From assembly GCF_006345805.1 (NCBI RefSeq), contig NC_043018.1, forward strand, positions 12,276,001-12,340,000: DNA of 64,000 nucleotides, read 5' to 3'. Below are positions 6,746 to 47,140 of the stretch, piece by piece. Each line of letters starts with the position of its first letter. The stretch's first letter is position 1. The translations under genes and the position numbers were made by a program. The DNA comes from Octopus sinensis (Eukaryota). Below the pieces are notes generated by a model. The model was not told the origin of the DNA. It worked only from the letters and a program-made list of their open reading frames with translations, and made no database searches.

Positions 6746-7000
6746 ATCATCATCATCATCATCGTTTAGCGTCCGTTTTCCGTGCTAGCACGGGTTGTAT
6801 GGTTCGACTGGGGTCTGGGAAGCCAGGAGGCTACCAGGCTCCAGTCTGATCTGGCAGTGTTTCTACAGCTGGATGCCCTTCCTAATGCCAACCACTCCAT
6901 GAGTGTAGTGGGTGCTTTTTATGTGTCACCGGCACAGAAGCCAGTCAAGGCGGCGCTGGCATCGGCCACGTTCGGATGGTGCTTTTTATGTGCCACCGGC
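6746..7000 (-). mobile_element. 5'-truncated RTE 3'-UTR copy with (GAT)n tail
   Basis: (CAT)n followed by the reverse complement of GGAGTGGTTGGC.TTAGGAAGGGCATCCAGC...CATGCTAGCA. Same family as 12810-13406 and 60053-60620. Confidence 0.75.
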
Positions 7001-7439
7001 TTCAATGTATACATATTTTGTGGGAATACTGTTGTTGGGTACAGGTTTCCATTGGGTCTATCCCATTTGCCCTTTAACATTCTCAAGAAATGAACGAATG
7101 CTGCAAAATCCTTTGACCTTTTAGAAACATCTGAGAATAACAAACTTTCCTGATTACCTTCTGTCTTGTGATGGGAAATCAATATTTTATCTGTCTAAGG
7201 TAAATGATGAAGCTGCTTTCTCTTGCCTTAAAATAAAAACAGAGATTCTGTGAAACATTGTTTTTTTTTTCAAGAATAATTTTTAAAAAAGCATTGAATT
7301 TGTGTGTGTGTGTGTGTGTGCTGGAGTGGTATGTATATTTTGTATATGTGTTTATGTGTCTATGCCAATTGTTTGTATACACATGTCAAAAGCAAGTGAT
7401 GACCTTGCTCACATAGCAGATTCTGTAAGAAAATAAAGC

Positions 7440-10668: not shown

Positions 10669-11050
10669 TGAGGTGGTATCAGAATGTTCTTGGGCTAGTT
10701 CTGTTGCACACCAACAGATGGCAGCACATGGTTGCATGCCCAGTGAGAGCTGGCAGTGACCTTCATGAGGCGGTGTGCTGAGTGGCATCACTTGGTTTAC
10801 TTCGTGAGTTGTGAAATTTGTGTTTTTGTGGATCCTGTGTCTGCTGTAGCCTGCGATTTTGTCATGGGCAGGAAGCTGGAACAAAAAGCCAATGTGAAAT
10901 TCTGCACTAAAGTTTGAAAATCTACTACAGAGACATTGGACATGTTTTGGCAAGGTTACAGCAATGAAACAGCAGTCATCACAATGGAAGAGGCCTTCAT
11001 CTCCGTGACCAAAGAAGGCAACTCAATTAATACAATGCTGAATTTTCCTC
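10669..11050 (+). mobile_element. Internally deleted mariner (left end plus transposase fragments)
   Basis: TA|TGAGGTGGTATCAGAATGTT TIR-like start. From 10864 it reads MGRKLEQKANVKFCTKV*KSTTETLDM, fused to QSSQWKRPSSP*PKKA. No right TIR was seen. Confidence 0.75.
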
Positions 11051-33449: not shown

Positions 33450-33569
33450 GCTTATGGCCATATGATGTTGCATGGACTGGTTCCCATCTGATCACCTAAG
33501 TTAAGCAACACCAAGCCTCGTTAGTACTTAGGTGGGTGACTGCTCAAGAAATCTAGGTGCTGTAAGCAT
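33450..33569 (+). pseudogene. Full-length 5S rRNA pseudogene
   Basis: GCTTATGGCCATA...CTGATCACCTAAGTTAAGCAAC...GTTAGTACTTAGGTGGGTGACTGC...GGTGCTGTAAGC is colinear with metazoan 5S over about 120 bp. Many CG>TG/CA changes; single copy. Confidence 0.9.
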
Positions 33570-42224: not shown

Positions 42225-42772
42225 ATGGGTTGTCTGGAAAGTTCGTGCCGATTTATAGTAGCTTTCCTTTCGACATATTTTAGAACACGGTTGAGTCCAT
42301 AAAATAGGATTTGACTACACCTCCATTTAGAGCACAGTTTAAGCTATCTTTTCGTGGAAGAAGGTTTATGTTCCTATAACCTGTGCTAATTTTGTAACCC
42401 TTTAAAATGGAAGATAAGAAAGTTCATTTTCGGGACTTGATGCTTTGGGAACCAGACAAAAATTGCTGCAGCTTGGCTGGGATGTGTTACCCCACCCTCC
42501 ATATTAACCAGATATTGCTCCTTCAGATTTCCACTTATTTAGGTCTCTGCAGAATAGTCTTAATGGTAAAAATGTCAATTCCTTGGATGACGTAAAAAGA
42601 TACCTTGATGAATTCTTTGCCATGAAACCACCTCCATTCTGGGAAGAGGGTATTTTTCAAGTTAAAGGAAAGATGGAAACGTATTGTGCAACAAAATGGT
42701 TCATATTTGGTTGATTAAAAATGACCTTTTTCTTTCCTTTAAAAATCGGCACGAACTTTCTGGACAACCAAA
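42225..42772 (+). mobile_element. Internally deleted mariner with both TIRs
   Basis: TIRs GGTTGTCTGGAAAGTTCGTGCCGATTT / AAATCGGCACGAACTTTCTGGACAACC. MEDKKVHFRDLMLWE is fused to QKLLQLGWDVLPHPPY*PDIAPSDFHLFRSLQNSL..ERWKRIVQQNGSYLVD*. Confidence 0.93.
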
Positions 42773-43675: not shown

Positions 43676-45263
43676 TCACTGACAGTACTACTATAGACAG
43701 ACAGTATATATAGCCACTCCCTATATCAGATGTTCTCCTAACAATTCTTTGAAGTGTTTCGATCTCAAATGGAAATCTGTTTTTGTGAAATTTATCAGCA
43801 TTTCAACAATGCAGGGCCAAAAAGTCTGCAAATGATGCTTCCAATTGGTGAGAAAGTGTTAAAGACAAATGAAAGACAAAAAAATGGCTTTGCTTGTTTG
43901 TCTCCATAGTAAATTTCACAAAAATAATTATTTGAACTTAGACAACTATCATTTTAAAATAAAGTAATTAAAATGTAACGAACAAAACAAAATAACGAAT
44001 TCCATTATGTGTAATTACTCTTAAATGTCTCGACTTTTATTTGAAACAACTAAAACTTTGTCTGCAAATACATTCTTTTAATTATTTTAATGAGATTTTT
44101 CAGTTTAAATTGTAACTATTTCTCCACTTGCCATTCTTTTGAGTCAGATTGATTCCTGGTAATAATTATTCTGAAAGCTTGCTTTACATCTTTGTTGCAT
44201 GTTTTTCCTTGGTGTTTTTTTTTTCTTTTTTACATTGAATCAAGTTGGTGTAGACGATGGCCTTGTGGTTGAGAAGTTCACTTCATAATCACATTGTTCT
44301 AAGTTAGATCCACTTTGCAATCCCTTCGACAGATATTTGGGTTAACTCATGACTGGAATGTGATAAAAGGGACTTGTGAGAAATCCTGTGTGTGTGTGAT
44401 ATCTTTTACCCATACACATTGGCACCCCCCCCCCAAAAAAACCTGAAAAACAGTGCTTTTTGAATTTAAAAAAAAGTGGTGATATTTATTGTGTGTCAGG
44501 TGATCTCTTGTTTGAACACCTGCTACAAGAGGCACTTACCATTGTCACATCTGTGGCAGGTCCCAAGTAGACTGGAAAACCACACCCATTTAAGAAAACA
44601 ATTGAGTAATGGCATTGCTCAAAATCCTGTTTCAGCCATCATGTATTTATATATCATCATCCTTTAATGTCCATGTTCCATGCTGGCATGAGTTTGACAG
44701 TTTGACAGGATCTGATGAGCCCAAGGCCCATTCCTCAGTGTCTGTATGGCATGGTTTCTTAGACTGGATGCTGTTCCTAATACCTTTATAGTATGTACTG
44801 GGTGCTTTTCTCATGCCACAAGCACTAGTGAGGTCACCTTGCAGCTTAAGACAATGACCCCTGAATAGAGGGGGAACTTTATACTAAGGGAATAACGAGT
44901 AGAGAAAGGTAAAATATGAGCAAAAAGTGCAGGAGCAGAACAGGTTTCTTGTTGAAGATGAGTTACATGATGACTAATTATATTTTGAAGAGAGGTTGGG
45001 GTAGAGCTGGAAAATTGGTGATGAGGCATCAGCCTGGACCTTTAAGGTTTTGATGTGGATTTTCCCAATTTTTTTCTTGCTGTGGCCTTGCAAATGATGG
45101 AGGTAAGCTTTTTAATAAAAAAGATTTTGGAAGATTTTGATTGTTTTCCTTCCCCTCTCTTACCTCCATCCACCTTCTGACTATTTAGGCCAATTTTTTT
45201 CTGCTGGGTACTTAAAAAGCAATAGGAGAAGCCTAGAGAATGAAAATATTTTGAGATGGAAAG

Positions 45264-45363
45264 GTATGTGATTTAAGGGAGATTTAACTGCTGTTTCTAG
45301 CACATCCCACAATGACCTGGTAATCACTAAAAACAGCAGCTAAATCACCCTTAAATTACATAC
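45264..45363. repeat. 37-bp inverted repeat (33/37 match) with a 26-nt spacer, built from a dispersed repeat motif
   Basis: GTATGTGATTTAAGGGAGATTTAACTGCTGTTTCTAG versus the reverse complement of 45327-45363. Confidence 0.85.
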
Positions 45364-45984
45364 ATTTTTATCTAAAAATATTTTCATAATTTCTTTCCCG
45401 ACCATAAAATTTTCTCTCGTTGCTTTTCAAGTGCCGAGTGCAAGAAAAAGTGGACAAAGAGATTGTAACTTTTTGAAACTTTTCATTCATAAATAGCTTC
45501 CCCTCTTCGTTTTCAAGGCTGCAGTGAAAGTAAAAAAATAGGAAAGATCTCTGTCAAAATGGAGAAAATCCAGCTTAAGGGGGTGTCATGATCCAAAGCT
45601 CAGCTCTACAAATAATTAAATGAAATTACAGCTGCCACAAGCATTTTGTGTATATTCAGACATGGTTATATTGTTATCTTCAGTTGGTGGGTGGTCAGTT
45701 TTGATACACTGGTACAGGGTATAAAACTGAACCTTCTCTAAGTTTGGAGCTCTACAATAAATTTAATAAGTATCTTTAGGGAGCTCTGTGGAAGGGGTAA
45801 CACACACAGTTTGACCATGCAAAACCCCATTTTTGGATACATCATTTTCATGATAAAATATCTATTTTTCTTGGAAAATTATATATCTTTTGAAAGTTCT
45901 GGATGTGAACTTTGTTCTCATATAGTGTTAATAAAAACCTGACACTTACCTAAGATGTCTACATTTTTTAATCACCTGATTTAC

Positions 45985-46145
45985 AATATGGGTGAGTAGA
46001 CCATAACCCACACCGCCAGATATTTTAAGCATCTCAGTGGTGATTCTTGAGCAGCTGAGGGTATTTCCCTGTCTTCATATCCTTAATTGCTTTATCTACC
46101 TGGGTACTGTTGATTCAGGTAGCTGGTCCCTCAATTGGGTAATAA
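45985..46145 (-). mobile_element. RTE LINE remnant (start of the RT domain)
   Basis: PIEGPAT*INSTQVDKAIKDMKTGK../SRITTEMLKISGGVG resembles v..Ai..mK.GKA.Gp.gI.aEmlK. Confidence 0.75.
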
Positions 46146-46201
46146 AATATCTTTATTATTCTTAATTCATTTATCTCTATTTCTGTTTTTATCTTTTGCA
46201 G

Positions 46202-46231
46202 GTAAGTCAAAGTGGTTTTGAAATCCATTTG
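46202..46231 (+). other. Candidate recursive splice site with a 30-nt RS-exon
   Basis: CTTAAT branch-like site, 77-nt AG-free T-rich tract, TTTTGCAG|GTAAGT, and a second TTG|GTAAGT donor 30 nt downstream. Confidence 0.55.
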
Positions 46232-46834
46232 GTAAGTCTCAGCCATTTTCAGTTTTCCTCCTCCCACTGCTTTTAGAGATTTTCTGTATTTAATGAAAAA
46301 CTGACTGATTTGGTTTCACTAAATGTTCCACTGCCTCCAACCACAGATCTGGGAACAGTTCATTCCTCAATAAGAATAATGCATGATATATAACATTTCT
46401 TTGCTGTGAACAGGAGTTACCGTTTCTTGAAAATTTAATTAACCACTGCTTACACTATTTACTAAAGGTGGAGGTGTGTATTCTTGCAGTTGTTGTTATT
46501 GCTGCTGTTGCCATCTCTGTTAGGTCATTTAGTACATATCTACATATATATATATATATATATGTAAATATTGCTTGGTCTTTATATATTATTCATAATC
46601 ATACAACATTGCTTGTTTGAGCAGTGTGCATAAATGTGTGTGTTTGTTTTGTCTCGGTAAATTGTATTCTGAATGTCATGTGTGTGTATGTGCTTGTCTT
46701 TGTGTATGTGACTCCCACAAGATAAGTACATCACTCCTTTCCCAGCTTCCTTTCCCAGTGATTGTTGCAGCCAGTGAATAAATACTTCCCAGAAATTGAT
46801 ATTTTTGGTTCATATCAACTGCCAGAAAATTAAA

Positions 46835-47140
46835 ATGTATAACCAAGTGATGGTTCCAAGTCCAGTCCCACTGTGTGACACCTTGAGCGAGTGTCTTCTA
46901 CTATAGCCCCAGGTTGACCAAAGCCTTGTGAGTGGATCAGGTAGACAGAAACTGAAAGAAGCCCATCATATATATCTATATATGTATCAGTGTTTGTCCC
47001 CCCCACCACCATTTGACAACTGGTGCTAGTGTGTTTACATCCCTGTAACTTAGCGATTTGGCAAAAGAAACTGATAGAATAAGTATGATGCTTATAAAAA
47101 AATAAGTCCTGGGGTTGATGCATTTGCCTAAAGATTCTTC
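46835..47140 (+). mobile_element. SINE family A, near full length
   Basis: CAGTCCCACTGTGTGACACCTTGAGCGAGTGTCTTCTACTATAGCC...AATAAGTCCTGGGGTTGAT. Confidence 0.8.

What the first reader, a model, noticed from the sequence alone, without database searches (positions are those of the whole stretch)
46140..46240. Recursive-splicing architecture: AG|GTAAGT with a competing donor 30 nt downstream
Seen: CTTAAT branch-like site (46161-46166), no AG from 46123 to 46199, TTTTATCTTTTGCAG immediately followed by GTAAGT (46202), and a second TTG|GTAAGT at 46232. The 30-nt interval reads VSQSGFEIHL in phase 0 and has stops in the other two phases. Established: Drosophila ratchet points and vertebrate RS-exons have this layout, where splicing regenerates a donor that competes with the exon's own donor in long, often neural, introns. 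Inference: a recursive splice site in a long cephalopod intron that yields either zero-length splicing or inclusion of a 10-aa or poison exon. Caveat: the tract abuts an antisense RTE remnant, and AGGTAAGT also occurs without a tract elsewhere in the window.
Basis: partly seen in the sequence, partly recalled or inferred. Interest (0 to 1): 0.72.

Follow-up and report, generated by a model that had tools for sequence, protein, structure and literature searches.

The report
Candidate recursive splice site, unverified
A stretch of non-coding DNA carries a textbook "splice acceptor fused to splice donor" signal with a second identical donor 30 bases on, which could let a very long intron be removed in steps, but sequence alone cannot show that the cell uses it.

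Summary
A T-rich tract with no AG for 77 nt ends in TTTTGCAG|GTAAGT at 46201|46202. A second TTG|GTAAGT lies at 46231|46232. The 30 nt between them are open in one frame only.

AGGTAAGT alone occurs at chance frequency. AGGTAAGT behind a pyrimidine tract is expected about 0.01-0.02 times per 64-kb window. Adding the second donor brings this to a few per 10,000 windows. That is rare for one window, but still tens of chance sites in a genome of a few Gb.

The neighbouring antisense LINE reverse-transcriptase fragment is real but covers only about 45949-46143. Three tests found no transposon or coding ancestry in the motif itself.

No exon was found anywhere in the window. A consistent T>A skew on the + strand is the only, indirect, hint that the + strand is the sense strand of a transcript. 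I could not test transcription, junction use or conservation.

My estimates are about 0.4 for a used ratchet point with a 30-nt RS-exon, about 0.4 for an unused chance pseudo-site, and about 0.1 for an included microexon. If real, it is a known mechanism in a new lineage. Interest is modest until RNA data are checked.

The parts
46123..46199 (+). AG-exclusion zone (77 nt without AG) upstream of the acceptor
   Evidence: AG-to-AG gaps of at least 78 nt are 2.3% of gaps on the + strand and 0.85% on the - strand.
46161..46174 (+). Branch-point-like candidates: CTTAAT, with yUnAy matches TTAAT, TTCAT and TTTAT whose branch A lies 35, 31 and 27 nt before the AG
   Evidence: There is no strict CTRAY. 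Such matches are expected by chance in AT-rich sequence, so this part is weak.
46167..46199 (+). Polypyrimidine tract TCATTTATCTCTATTTCTGTTTTTATCTTTTGC (27 of 33 pyrimidines), with UGC directly before the AG
   Evidence: The acceptor score is in the top 11 of about 3,270 AG sites on the + strand.
46200..46207 (+). Juxtaposed acceptor|donor AG|GTAAGT. The putative ratchet point has its junction between 46201 and 46202.
   Evidence: It is the top-scoring of 403 AGGT sites on both strands.
46202..46231 (+). 30-nt interval, the putative cryptic RS-exon or microexon. It reads VSQSGFEIHL in frame 0 and has stops in the other two frames.
46232..46237 (+). Second donor TTG|GTAAGT. Its intronic half GTAAGTC is identical to that of the first donor.
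   Evidence: The 8-mer GGTAAGTC is repeated with a 30-nt offset, and the extended match of 14/19 is not significant.
45949..46143 (-). Context only: a degraded fragment of a LINE-type reverse-transcriptase protein (region ...PIEGP..VDKAIKDMKTGK..ITTEMLKISGGVGYGLLTHIVNQVIKK) with one stop and one frameshift. It ends about 25 nt before the pyrimidine tract and about 57 nt before the AG.
   Evidence: tblastn and HMM searches with 120 real family proteins hit the window only here. The frame-joined translation scores 41.7 bits, E 6e-12.

Best explanation
The site is a splice-competent unit on the + strand that would act as a recursive splice site (ratchet point) with a 30-nt cryptic RS-exon.

Proposed mechanism:
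1. The downstream donor at 46232 and the strong acceptor at 46201 define the 30-nt unit.
2. The upstream exon is ligated to 46202, which places GTAAGT directly after that exon and so regenerates a donor.
3. The regenerated donor competes with the identical GTAAGTC donor 30 nt downstream.
4. If the regenerated donor is used, the 30 nt are removed with the rest of the intron (zero-length splicing).
5. If the downstream donor is used, an in-frame 10-residue insert is included.

Shown here: the motif, its rarity, and its position outside recognisable transposon sequence. Inferred: that the + strand is transcribed as part of a long intron, and every step of actual use.
For: - Every motif element is present, and the site is the best of 403 AGGT sites in the window.
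- The expected chance count is 0.01-0.02 per window for tract plus AGGTAAGT. The second consensus donor, at a distance suited to exon definition, adds a factor of about 0.02-0.03.
- The layout matches the published ratchet-point definition: tandem acceptor|donor, a short cryptic RS-exon and a downstream donor (PMC8605326). Downstream donors are enriched after fly recursive sites (PMC6110457).
- In all five invertebrates tested by Shepard et al. (fly, mosquito, bee, beetle, sea urchin), this motif is 4 to more than 20 times commoner on the sense strand of introns over 50 kb than on the complement. The background is about 0.1 per 100 kb. A sense-strand instance in such a lineage is therefore usually non-random (PMC2773006).
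- T exceeds A on the + strand by 6.4% after masking repeats, in 20 of 23 bins. This is the sign reported for the coding strand of transcribed regions in eukaryotes (PMC5786239).
- Strong acceptor-like sites split 4 on + to 0 on -.
- No transposon or coding ancestry was detected for 46144-46315.
Against: - There is no direct evidence of transcription, junction use, lariats or conservation.
- No exon or host gene was found in 64 kb, so the region may be intergenic.
- Whether cephalopods show the invertebrate-type enrichment of the motif is unknown. Vertebrates, which like the octopus have large repeat-rich genomes, show none (ratios 0.9-1.5).
- No paper in the library links recursive splicing to cephalopods.
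- A genome of a few Gb should hold hundreds of chance tract+AGGTAAGT sites and around ten to twenty with a second donor.
- The 30-nt exon is shorter than the roughly 50 nt typical in flies.
- The two donors have identical intronic halves, so the ratchet-point donor has no built-in advantage.
- A similar motif (score 10.3) sits at 14011(-), next to the LTR-element ORFs, so near-consensus sites do arise without function.
- The two GGTAAGTC copies may not be independent events.
Confidence: 0.4

Rival explanations
1. The site is a chance pseudo-site. A T-rich stretch in AT-rich non-coding DNA happens to end in CAG|GTAAGT, with a second GTAAGT nearby, and splicing does not use it. The DNA may be intergenic, transcribed from the other strand, or the site may simply be ignored.
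For: - AGGTAAGT is at chance frequency: 4 observed against 1.2-3.1 expected.
- T-rich acceptor-like tracts are common on this strand, with 4 in the window.
- The branch-like site and the single open frame carry no information.
- No exon was found in 64 kb.
- At 0.01-0.02 per window, a multi-Gb genome should hold hundreds of such motifs by chance, and the first-stage reader picked this one after the fact.
- A near-consensus AG|GTAAGA sits at 14011(-), next to the LTR-element ORFs.
- In vertebrates the motif is no commoner on the sense strand than on the antisense strand (PMC2773006).
- The two donors share an 8-mer and a 14/19 match, which is compatible with a small old duplication that would make them non-independent.
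Against: - The joint architecture (tract, 77-nt AG-free zone, perfect CAG|GTAAGT, second GTAAGT at +30) is expected only a few times per 10,000 windows.
- It is the top-scoring site in the window.
- The strand skew suggests that the + strand is the sense strand of a transcript.
- In every invertebrate tested, most sense-strand instances exceed the background.
- Tandem Repeats Finder finds no duplication.
Confidence: 0.4
2. The 30 nt form an ordinary alternatively included microexon, possibly neuronal and dependent on the Srrm234 eMIC domain (the neuronal microexon activator). It would add VSQSGFEIHL to a protein. That it starts with GTAAGT would be incidental, or would make it an expressed RS-exon.
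For: - The interval is 30 nt, a multiple of three, and open in frame 0.
- The 3' splice-site region has features listed for eMIC-dependent microexons: a long AG-exclusion zone, UGC directly before the AG (UUUUGCAG) and a long pyrimidine tract (PMC8797185).
- Both flanking splice sites are strong.
Against: - There is no strong CUAAY/CTRAY branch site.
- eMIC exons in flies have weak, not consensus, splice sites.
- An open frame over 10 codons is expected by chance.
- No flanking exons or gene are known.
- An exon that begins with a perfect GTAAGT would tend to be removed by recursive splicing unless protected.
Confidence: 0.12
3. The motif is the antisense of transposon sequence. The purine-rich coding or tail sequence of the neighbouring LINE, or of another retroposon on the - strand, reads as a pyrimidine tract plus AG|GT on the + strand, as in antisense-TE cryptic exons. 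This concerns origin and does not by itself exclude use.
For: - A genuine LINE reverse-transcriptase fragment lies on the - strand at 45949-46143, ending about 25 nt from the tract.
- The - strand frame stays open for 66 codons through the motif and is in frame with PIEGP.
- By eye, TYLQKIKTE resembles the family's HYERLLNEE.
- On the - strand the tract is A-rich, like a retroposon tail.
Against: - A profile of the family's upstream region gives no hit at 46144-46315.
- In a permutation test the real upstream piece adds nothing: 931 of 1000 shuffles score as well or better.
- A full-family HMM over all six frames finds only 45961-46141.
- phmmer of the 66-residue piece against 1.84 billion proteins returns only three bacterial repeat proteins, which I judge spurious.
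- There is no Pfam hit, no other copy in the window, and no hit in metagenome contigs.
Confidence: 0.05

Closest known systems
Drosophila intronic ratchet points (zero-nucleotide recursive splice sites with cryptic RS-exons; Hatton 1998, Burnette 2005, Duff 2015, Joseph 2018, as summarised in PMC8605326 and PMC6110457)
   Same: It has a pyrimidine tract followed by NCAG|GTAAGT, and a short downstream interval closed by a second strong donor. The interval has stops in two of its three frames. The site lies in at least 64 kb without a recognisable exon.
   Different: The RS-exon would be 30 nt rather than about 50 nt, and it is a multiple of three with one open frame, whereas fly cryptic RS-exons are generally out of frame. 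The competing donors have identical intronic halves, whereas in flies the ratchet-point donor is usually the stronger. No RNA evidence or conservation is available, and these are what define the fly sites. The lineage is different (probably a cephalopod), and no recursive splicing has been reported there.
Vertebrate RS-exons (Sibley 2015; Blazquez 2018, PMC6224609)
   Same: An exon-defined unit has a first base pair GT that regenerates a donor after ligation. Donor competition then decides between skipping and inclusion. The setting is a long gene in a large, repeat-rich genome.
   Different: Vertebrate RS sites have a looser YAG|GT consensus and were established from junction reads, saw-tooth coverage and conservation. 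None of these is available here. Vertebrates show no sense-strand enrichment of the motif (PMC2773006), so there the motif alone predicts poorly.
eMIC/Srrm234-dependent neuronal microexons (PMC8797185)
   Same: It is of microexon size and frame-preserving. It has a long AG-exclusion zone, UGC next to the 3' splice site and a long pyrimidine tract.
   Different: Its splice sites are consensus-strength rather than weak. It has no strong CUAAY branch site. The exon begins with a perfect donor. No evidence of inclusion is available.
Antisense-transposon cryptic exons (exonised antisense LINE or SINE sequence)
   Same: The site lies next to an antisense LINE fragment, and a T-rich tract on the sense strand corresponds to A-rich sequence on the transposon strand.
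   Different: The motif itself lies outside every detectable transposon homology.

Membership tests
Intronic ratchet point / zero-nt recursive splice site (Drosophila type) | [quoted passage not shown] | tested here: met
   TTTCTGTTTTTATCTTTTGCAG|GTAAGT at 46201|46202. It is the top of 403 AGGT sites.
Intronic ratchet point / zero-nt recursive splice site (Drosophila type) | Location on the sense strand of a long intron of a transcribed gene | tested here: inconclusive
   No exon was found on either strand in 64 kb. The T>A skew of +6.4% in 20 of 23 bins fits the + strand as sense strand (PMC5786239), but it is indirect.
Intronic ratchet point / zero-nt recursive splice site (Drosophila type) | Downstream donor that defines a short cryptic RS-exon (about 50 nt) | tested here: met
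   TTG|GTAAGT lies 30 nt downstream. This is shorter than the typical length given in PMC8605326.
Intronic ratchet point / zero-nt recursive splice site (Drosophila type) | Regenerated donor stronger than the RS-exon donor, so that the cryptic exon is skipped | tested here: inconclusive
   The intronic halves are identical (GTAAGTC; both score 4.67). The exonic half of the regenerated donor depends on an unknown upstream exon.
Intronic ratchet point / zero-nt recursive splice site (Drosophila type) | RNA evidence: junction reads into the site, saw-tooth intronic coverage, recursive lariats | not testable with these tools
Intronic ratchet point / zero-nt recursive splice site (Drosophila type) | Strong conservation of the acceptor|donor core relative to its flanks | not testable with these tools
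   No orthologous DNA could be reached. Thirteen window ORFs are absent from the protein and contig index, and a 24-nt pattern has no match in metagenome contigs.
eMIC-dependent neuronal microexon | Length of about 30 nt or less, frame-preserving, open reading frame | tested here: met
   The interval is 30 nt and frame 0 is open. This is weak evidence because it is expected by chance.
eMIC-dependent neuronal microexon | Long AG-exclusion zone, UGC close to the 3' splice site, long pyrimidine tract | tested here: met
   There are 77 nt without AG, UGC at -5 to -3, and 27 of 33 pyrimidines. The feature list is from PMC8797185.
eMIC-dependent neuronal microexon | Strong CUAAY branch-point sequence and weak splice sites | tested here: not met
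   There is no CTRAY in 46100-46199. Both splice sites are of consensus strength.
eMIC-dependent neuronal microexon | Inclusion in neuronal mRNA | not testable with these tools
   There are no RNA data, and the 10-residue peptide cannot be searched.
Antisense-transposon-derived cryptic exon | Splice signals lie inside sequence homologous to a transposon | tested here: not met
   LINE homology stops at about 46143. The permutation test was negative. The search of 1.84 billion proteins gave only hits I judge spurious. There is no second copy in the window.

The most novel reading that the evidence does not exclude
Cephalopods use Drosophila-style recursive splicing to process their very long introns. 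This site would then be a balanced binary switch: two donors with identical intronic halves, 30 nt apart, choose between scar-less intron removal and insertion of an in-frame 10-residue segment. That would combine a ratchet point with a frame-preserving microexon.
Probability: 0.1. Interest if true: 0.5.

Novelty: new member of a known kind. Interest (0 to 1): 0.3.

Why it matters
Recursive splicing has been shown in flies and vertebrates. For other invertebrates it has only been inferred from motif enrichment. I found no report for cephalopods or any lophotrochozoan in the searched literature. Octopus-type genomes combine invertebrate ancestry with vertebrate-like size and repeat load. Whether they rely on ratchet points therefore bears on how long introns are spliced accurately and on why vertebrates seem to have largely lost the motif.

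One unverified motif cannot answer that. It does give an exact coordinate to check in existing brain RNA-seq. It also suggests a cheap genome-wide test: counting the motif on the sense and antisense strands of long introns.

Tried and rejected
1. **Extension of the LINE coding sequence across the motif.** The idea looked attractive by eye: a 66-codon open frame in phase with PIEGP, and TYLQKIKTE against the family's HYERLLNEE. It was rejected by the profile search, the permutation test, the six-frame full-family HMM and phmmer against 1.84 billion proteins.
2. **Twin-priming or inverted LINE structure.** Weak + strand tblastn hits at 46348-46473 and a weak - strand hit at 48764-48967 did not survive the HMM search. 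They are noise multiplied by 120 related queries.
3. **U1 snRNA pseudogene on the - strand.** ACTTACCTG is the 5' end of U1. There is no Rfam match at the site even at E<=10.
4. **Tandem duplication creating the second donor.** Tandem Repeats Finder finds nothing. The 14/19 match is not significant once the 8-mer is discounted.
5. **Terminal inverted repeats.** The arms 45939-45953 and 46228-46242 are 13/15 complementary. This is about the chance expectation, and there is no target-site duplication.
6. **Finding the host gene.** A search for splice-flanked ORFs found nothing credible. A Pfam scan of 539 ORF pieces gave only sub-threshold hits at about the rate expected by chance. I could not localise those hits in 20 hand-picked pieces.
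7. **Reaching the source or orthologous locus.** Exact look-ups of 13 window ORFs all failed. A 24-nt pattern in metagenome contigs gave no hit.
8. **First homology search with the frame-corrected remnant.** It found one candidate and no hit.

Full report
**1. Observation**

Reading 45600-46800 and a script check confirm every element at the stated coordinates.
- CTTAAT lies at 46161-46166.
- There is an AG at 46121-46122 and then none until 46200-46201.
- The tract TCATTTATCTCTATTTCTGTTTTTATCTTTTGC (27 of 33 pyrimidines) is followed by AG|GTAAGT, with the GT at 46202.
- A second TTG|GTAAGT has its GT at 46232.
- The 30-nt interval reads VSQSGFEIHL in frame 0 and has stops in the other two frames.

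**2. Is it more than chance?**

- The octamer AGGTAAGT alone is not unusual. It occurs once on + and three times on -, against 1.2-3.1 expected per window from Markov chains of order 1-5.
- Requiring at least 15/18 upstream pyrimidines lowers the expectation to 0.010-0.023 per window on both strands.
- An independent route gives the same order of magnitude. The + strand has 4 strong acceptor-like sites (YAG|G, at least 15/18 pyrimidines, at least 60 nt without AG). From base composition, each has about a 0.002 chance of being followed by TAAGT.
- A second GTAAGT within 15-100 nt has a chance of about 2-3%, given 12 GTAAGT on + in 64 kb.
- The whole layout is therefore expected a few times per 10,000 windows.
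- With a simple acceptor-plus-donor score, the site ranks first of 403 AGGT sites on both strands (12.4). The runner-up (10.3, TCATCTCTACAG|GTAAGACC at 14011 on -) lies next to the LTR-element ORFs, so near-consensus sites do arise without function.
- Extrapolating to a genome of a few Gb, chance alone should give hundreds of tract+AGGTAAGT sites and roughly ten to twenty with a second donor. The site was also chosen after the fact.
- The branch-like CTTAAT carries no weight. Five yUnAy matches lie in 46152-46192 and there is no CTRAY.
- One open frame out of three over ten codons also carries no weight.

**3. The transposon next door**

A query typed from my memory of this LINE family, mixed with the remnant's own residues, retrieved 5,148 real proteins carrying the Pfam reverse-transcriptase domain.

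Run back against the window, the 120 best proteins hit only 45958-46141 on the - strand. Profile searches give E 2.6e-5 and 0.006 for the two reading-frame pieces. The frame-joined translation gives 41.7 bits, E 6e-12.

The remnant is therefore real but short, about 195 bp. It covers the stretch just before the reverse-transcriptase domain and has one stop and one frameshift. The reverse-transcriptase domain that should follow it is nowhere in the window.

**4. Does the remnant extend over the motif?**

This was my leading alternative. On the - strand the frame stays open for 66 codons through the motif, in phase with PIEGP. ACT-TAC-CTG-CAA-AAG reads TYLQK, at the position where the family has a conserved HYERLLNEEF motif.

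The tests say no.
- A profile of the family's upstream region has no hit there.
- In a permutation test, 931 of 1000 shuffles of the upstream 59 residues score at least as well as the real sequence.
- A full-family HMM over all six frames, with stops masked, finds only 45961-46141.
- phmmer of the 66-residue piece against 1.84 billion representative proteins returns three bacterial proteins with internal repeats. Their scores are summed over 4-7 repeats, and I judge them spurious.
- There is no Pfam hit in any frame of 45001-47000.
- There is no second copy in the window.
- There is no tandem repeat.
- There is no Rfam match at the site, including U1.

The motif therefore lies about 25-60 nt outside the detectable remnant, in sequence that is unique as far as I can tell. 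A lineage-specific non-coding repeat cannot be excluded without the genome.

**5. Genomic context**

I found no exon.
- No ORF flanked by good splice sites looks credible on either strand.
- A Pfam scan of 539 stop-free pieces of at least 44 residues gave only Caveolin (8.8e-4), ARM_TANGO6 (9.3e-4), RVT_1 (7.7e-3) and LPD34 (7.2e-3). About 0.5 hits at E<=0.001 are expected from 539 trials.
- I could not localise those hits in 20 hand-picked pieces.

The window is thus either deep inside an intron or intergenic.

The one positive hint is strand composition. After masking repeats and transposon pieces, T exceeds A on the + strand by 6.4%, in 20 of 23 bins of 2.5 kb (binomial p 5e-4). Pyrimidine runs of at least 15 nt number 27 on + against 14 purine runs. 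Strong acceptor-like sites split 4 to 0. T over A on the coding strand is described as the general pattern for transcribed regions in eukaryotes (PMC5786239, citing Touchon 2004). This fits the + strand as the sense strand of a long transcription unit, but it is indirect.

The organism is plausibly an octopod. A transposon integrase ORF in the window has its best named relative in Octopus bimaculoides (73% identity) and others in O. sinensis (66-69%). Crustacean and gastropod proteins score similarly.

**6. Comparison with what is known**

*Fly ratchet points.* They are a tandem acceptor|donor with the consensus seen here, inside long introns. Each encompasses a short cryptic RS-exon of about 50 nt closed by a downstream donor. 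The acceptor|donor core is ultraconserved, while the exon body is poorly conserved and usually out of frame. The choice between skipping and inclusion follows donor strength (PMC8605326; PMC6110457).

The candidate meets the sequence criteria. Its exon is shorter at 30 nt, is a multiple of three, and has a donor whose intronic half is identical to that of the ratchet-point donor. The outcome would therefore hinge on the last bases of the unknown upstream exon.

*Base rates.* Shepard et al. counted this motif in introns over 50 kb against their complements. The ratios are 21.7 in fly, over 10 in mosquito, 8.2 in sea urchin, 8.0 in beetle, 4.0 in bee, and 0.9-1.5 in eight vertebrates. The background is about 0.1 per 100 kb (PMC2773006). 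No mollusc was included, and the one paper holding both "recursive splicing" and "cephalopod" has each term only in its reference list.

*Neuronal microexons.* The 3' splice-site region also resembles that of eMIC-dependent neuronal microexons: a long AG-free zone, UGC next to the AG and a long pyrimidine tract (PMC8797185). It lacks their strong CUAAY branch site and their weak splice sites.

**7. Weighing**

The posterior depends on two unknowns.
- Is the + strand the sense strand of a long intron? I put this near 0.45 given the skew and the absence of exons.
- Do cephalopods behave like the tested invertebrates or like vertebrates? I put this near 0.5.

With an invertebrate-type enrichment of about 8, a sense-strand motif is functional in most cases. 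With a vertebrate-type ratio it rarely is. The second donor favours function, less so if the two GGTAAGTC copies share an origin. The short exon and the after-the-fact selection count against it.

I arrive at:
- about 0.4 for a used recursive unit;
- about 0.4 for an unused chance site;
- about 0.12 for an included microexon;
- about 0.05 for a hidden transposon origin, which concerns ancestry rather than use.

**8. Verdict**

Its core claim is untested, and the tools here could not test it.

If true, it would be a new member of a known kind: recursive splicing in a new lineage, with an unusually balanced pair of donors. Interest is modest until the coordinate is checked against RNA-seq and related genomes. 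Both checks are quick with public octopus data.

Noticed in passing
window 33450-33568 (+): There is a full-length match to 5S ribosomal RNA (Rfam RF00001, 83.6 bits, model positions 1-120). It could be a 5S gene, a pseudogene or the head of a 5S-derived SINE.
   Followed up: no
window 14254-14907 (-) and 15334-15738 (+): These are retrotransposon pieces in the GC-richest part of the window. One is an integrase ORF of 217 residues whose relatives carry Pfam rve; the best named hit is Octopus bimaculoides at 73%. Nearby, on the opposite strand, is an ORF that looks RNase H-like by eye. The opposite orientations suggest two elements or a rearrangement.
   Followed up: partly
window 45944-45951 (-): A - strand AG|GTAAGT sits exactly where the reverse-transcriptase homology stops (…VIKK|CRHLR*). 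Together with 46228-46242 it forms a 13/15 inverted match flanking the remnant. This is about the chance expectation, and I have no explanation for it.
   Followed up: partly
window 14011 (-): This is the second-best juxtaposed acceptor|donor motif in the window, TCATCTCTACAG|GTAAGACC (score 10.3). It lies just outside the integrase ORF of the LTR-type element.
   Followed up: no
window 1-59500, + strand: T exceeds A consistently (+6.4% after masking, 20 of 23 bins), with no overall G/C skew. CT dinucleotides outnumber AG (3766 to 3175), and pyrimidine runs outnumber purine runs 27 to 14. This suggests transcription of the + strand across the whole window.
   Followed up: partly
window 6782-7093 (+), 12860-13195 (+), 48308-48637 (-), 59932-60459 (-); also 45-410, 46850-47120, 50064-50345, 57447-57578: Two dispersed repeat families are recognisable from recurring ORF motifs (…LDALPNANHSVSVVGAFYVPPA… and …SFCLPNPLTRLW..GYSRRH..KVPHSGT…) and from self-BLAST. 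They look like SINEs. One copy lies 650 nt downstream of the site.
   Followed up: no
window 10747-10914 (+) and 42508-42711 (+): These pieces look by eye like the N- and C-terminal parts of a mariner-type transposase (…EQKANVKFCTK…; …PDIAPSDFHLFRSLQNSLNGKNVNSLDDVKRYLDEFF…). Pfam gave no hit for the second piece at E<=0.1, so this rests on memory only.
   Followed up: partly
window 45240-45387: This is an imperfect palindrome of about 148 bp (78% self-complementary), about 800 nt upstream of the site. It may be a MITE-like hairpin.
   Followed up: no
window about 60000-64000: There is a block of about 4 kb of (TA)n/(TATG)n-type microsatellite, with GC down to 0.08 in the last 2 kb. Shorter TA and CA/TG runs are scattered through the window, including 46533-46571.
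   Followed up: no
window 13567-44567 (pieces not localised): The scan of 539 ORF pieces gave sub-threshold Pfam hits to Caveolin (E 8.8e-4) and the ARM-like repeat of TANGO6 (E 9.3e-4). This is about the number expected by chance. If either were a real exon, it would identify a host gene and its strand.
   Followed up: partly
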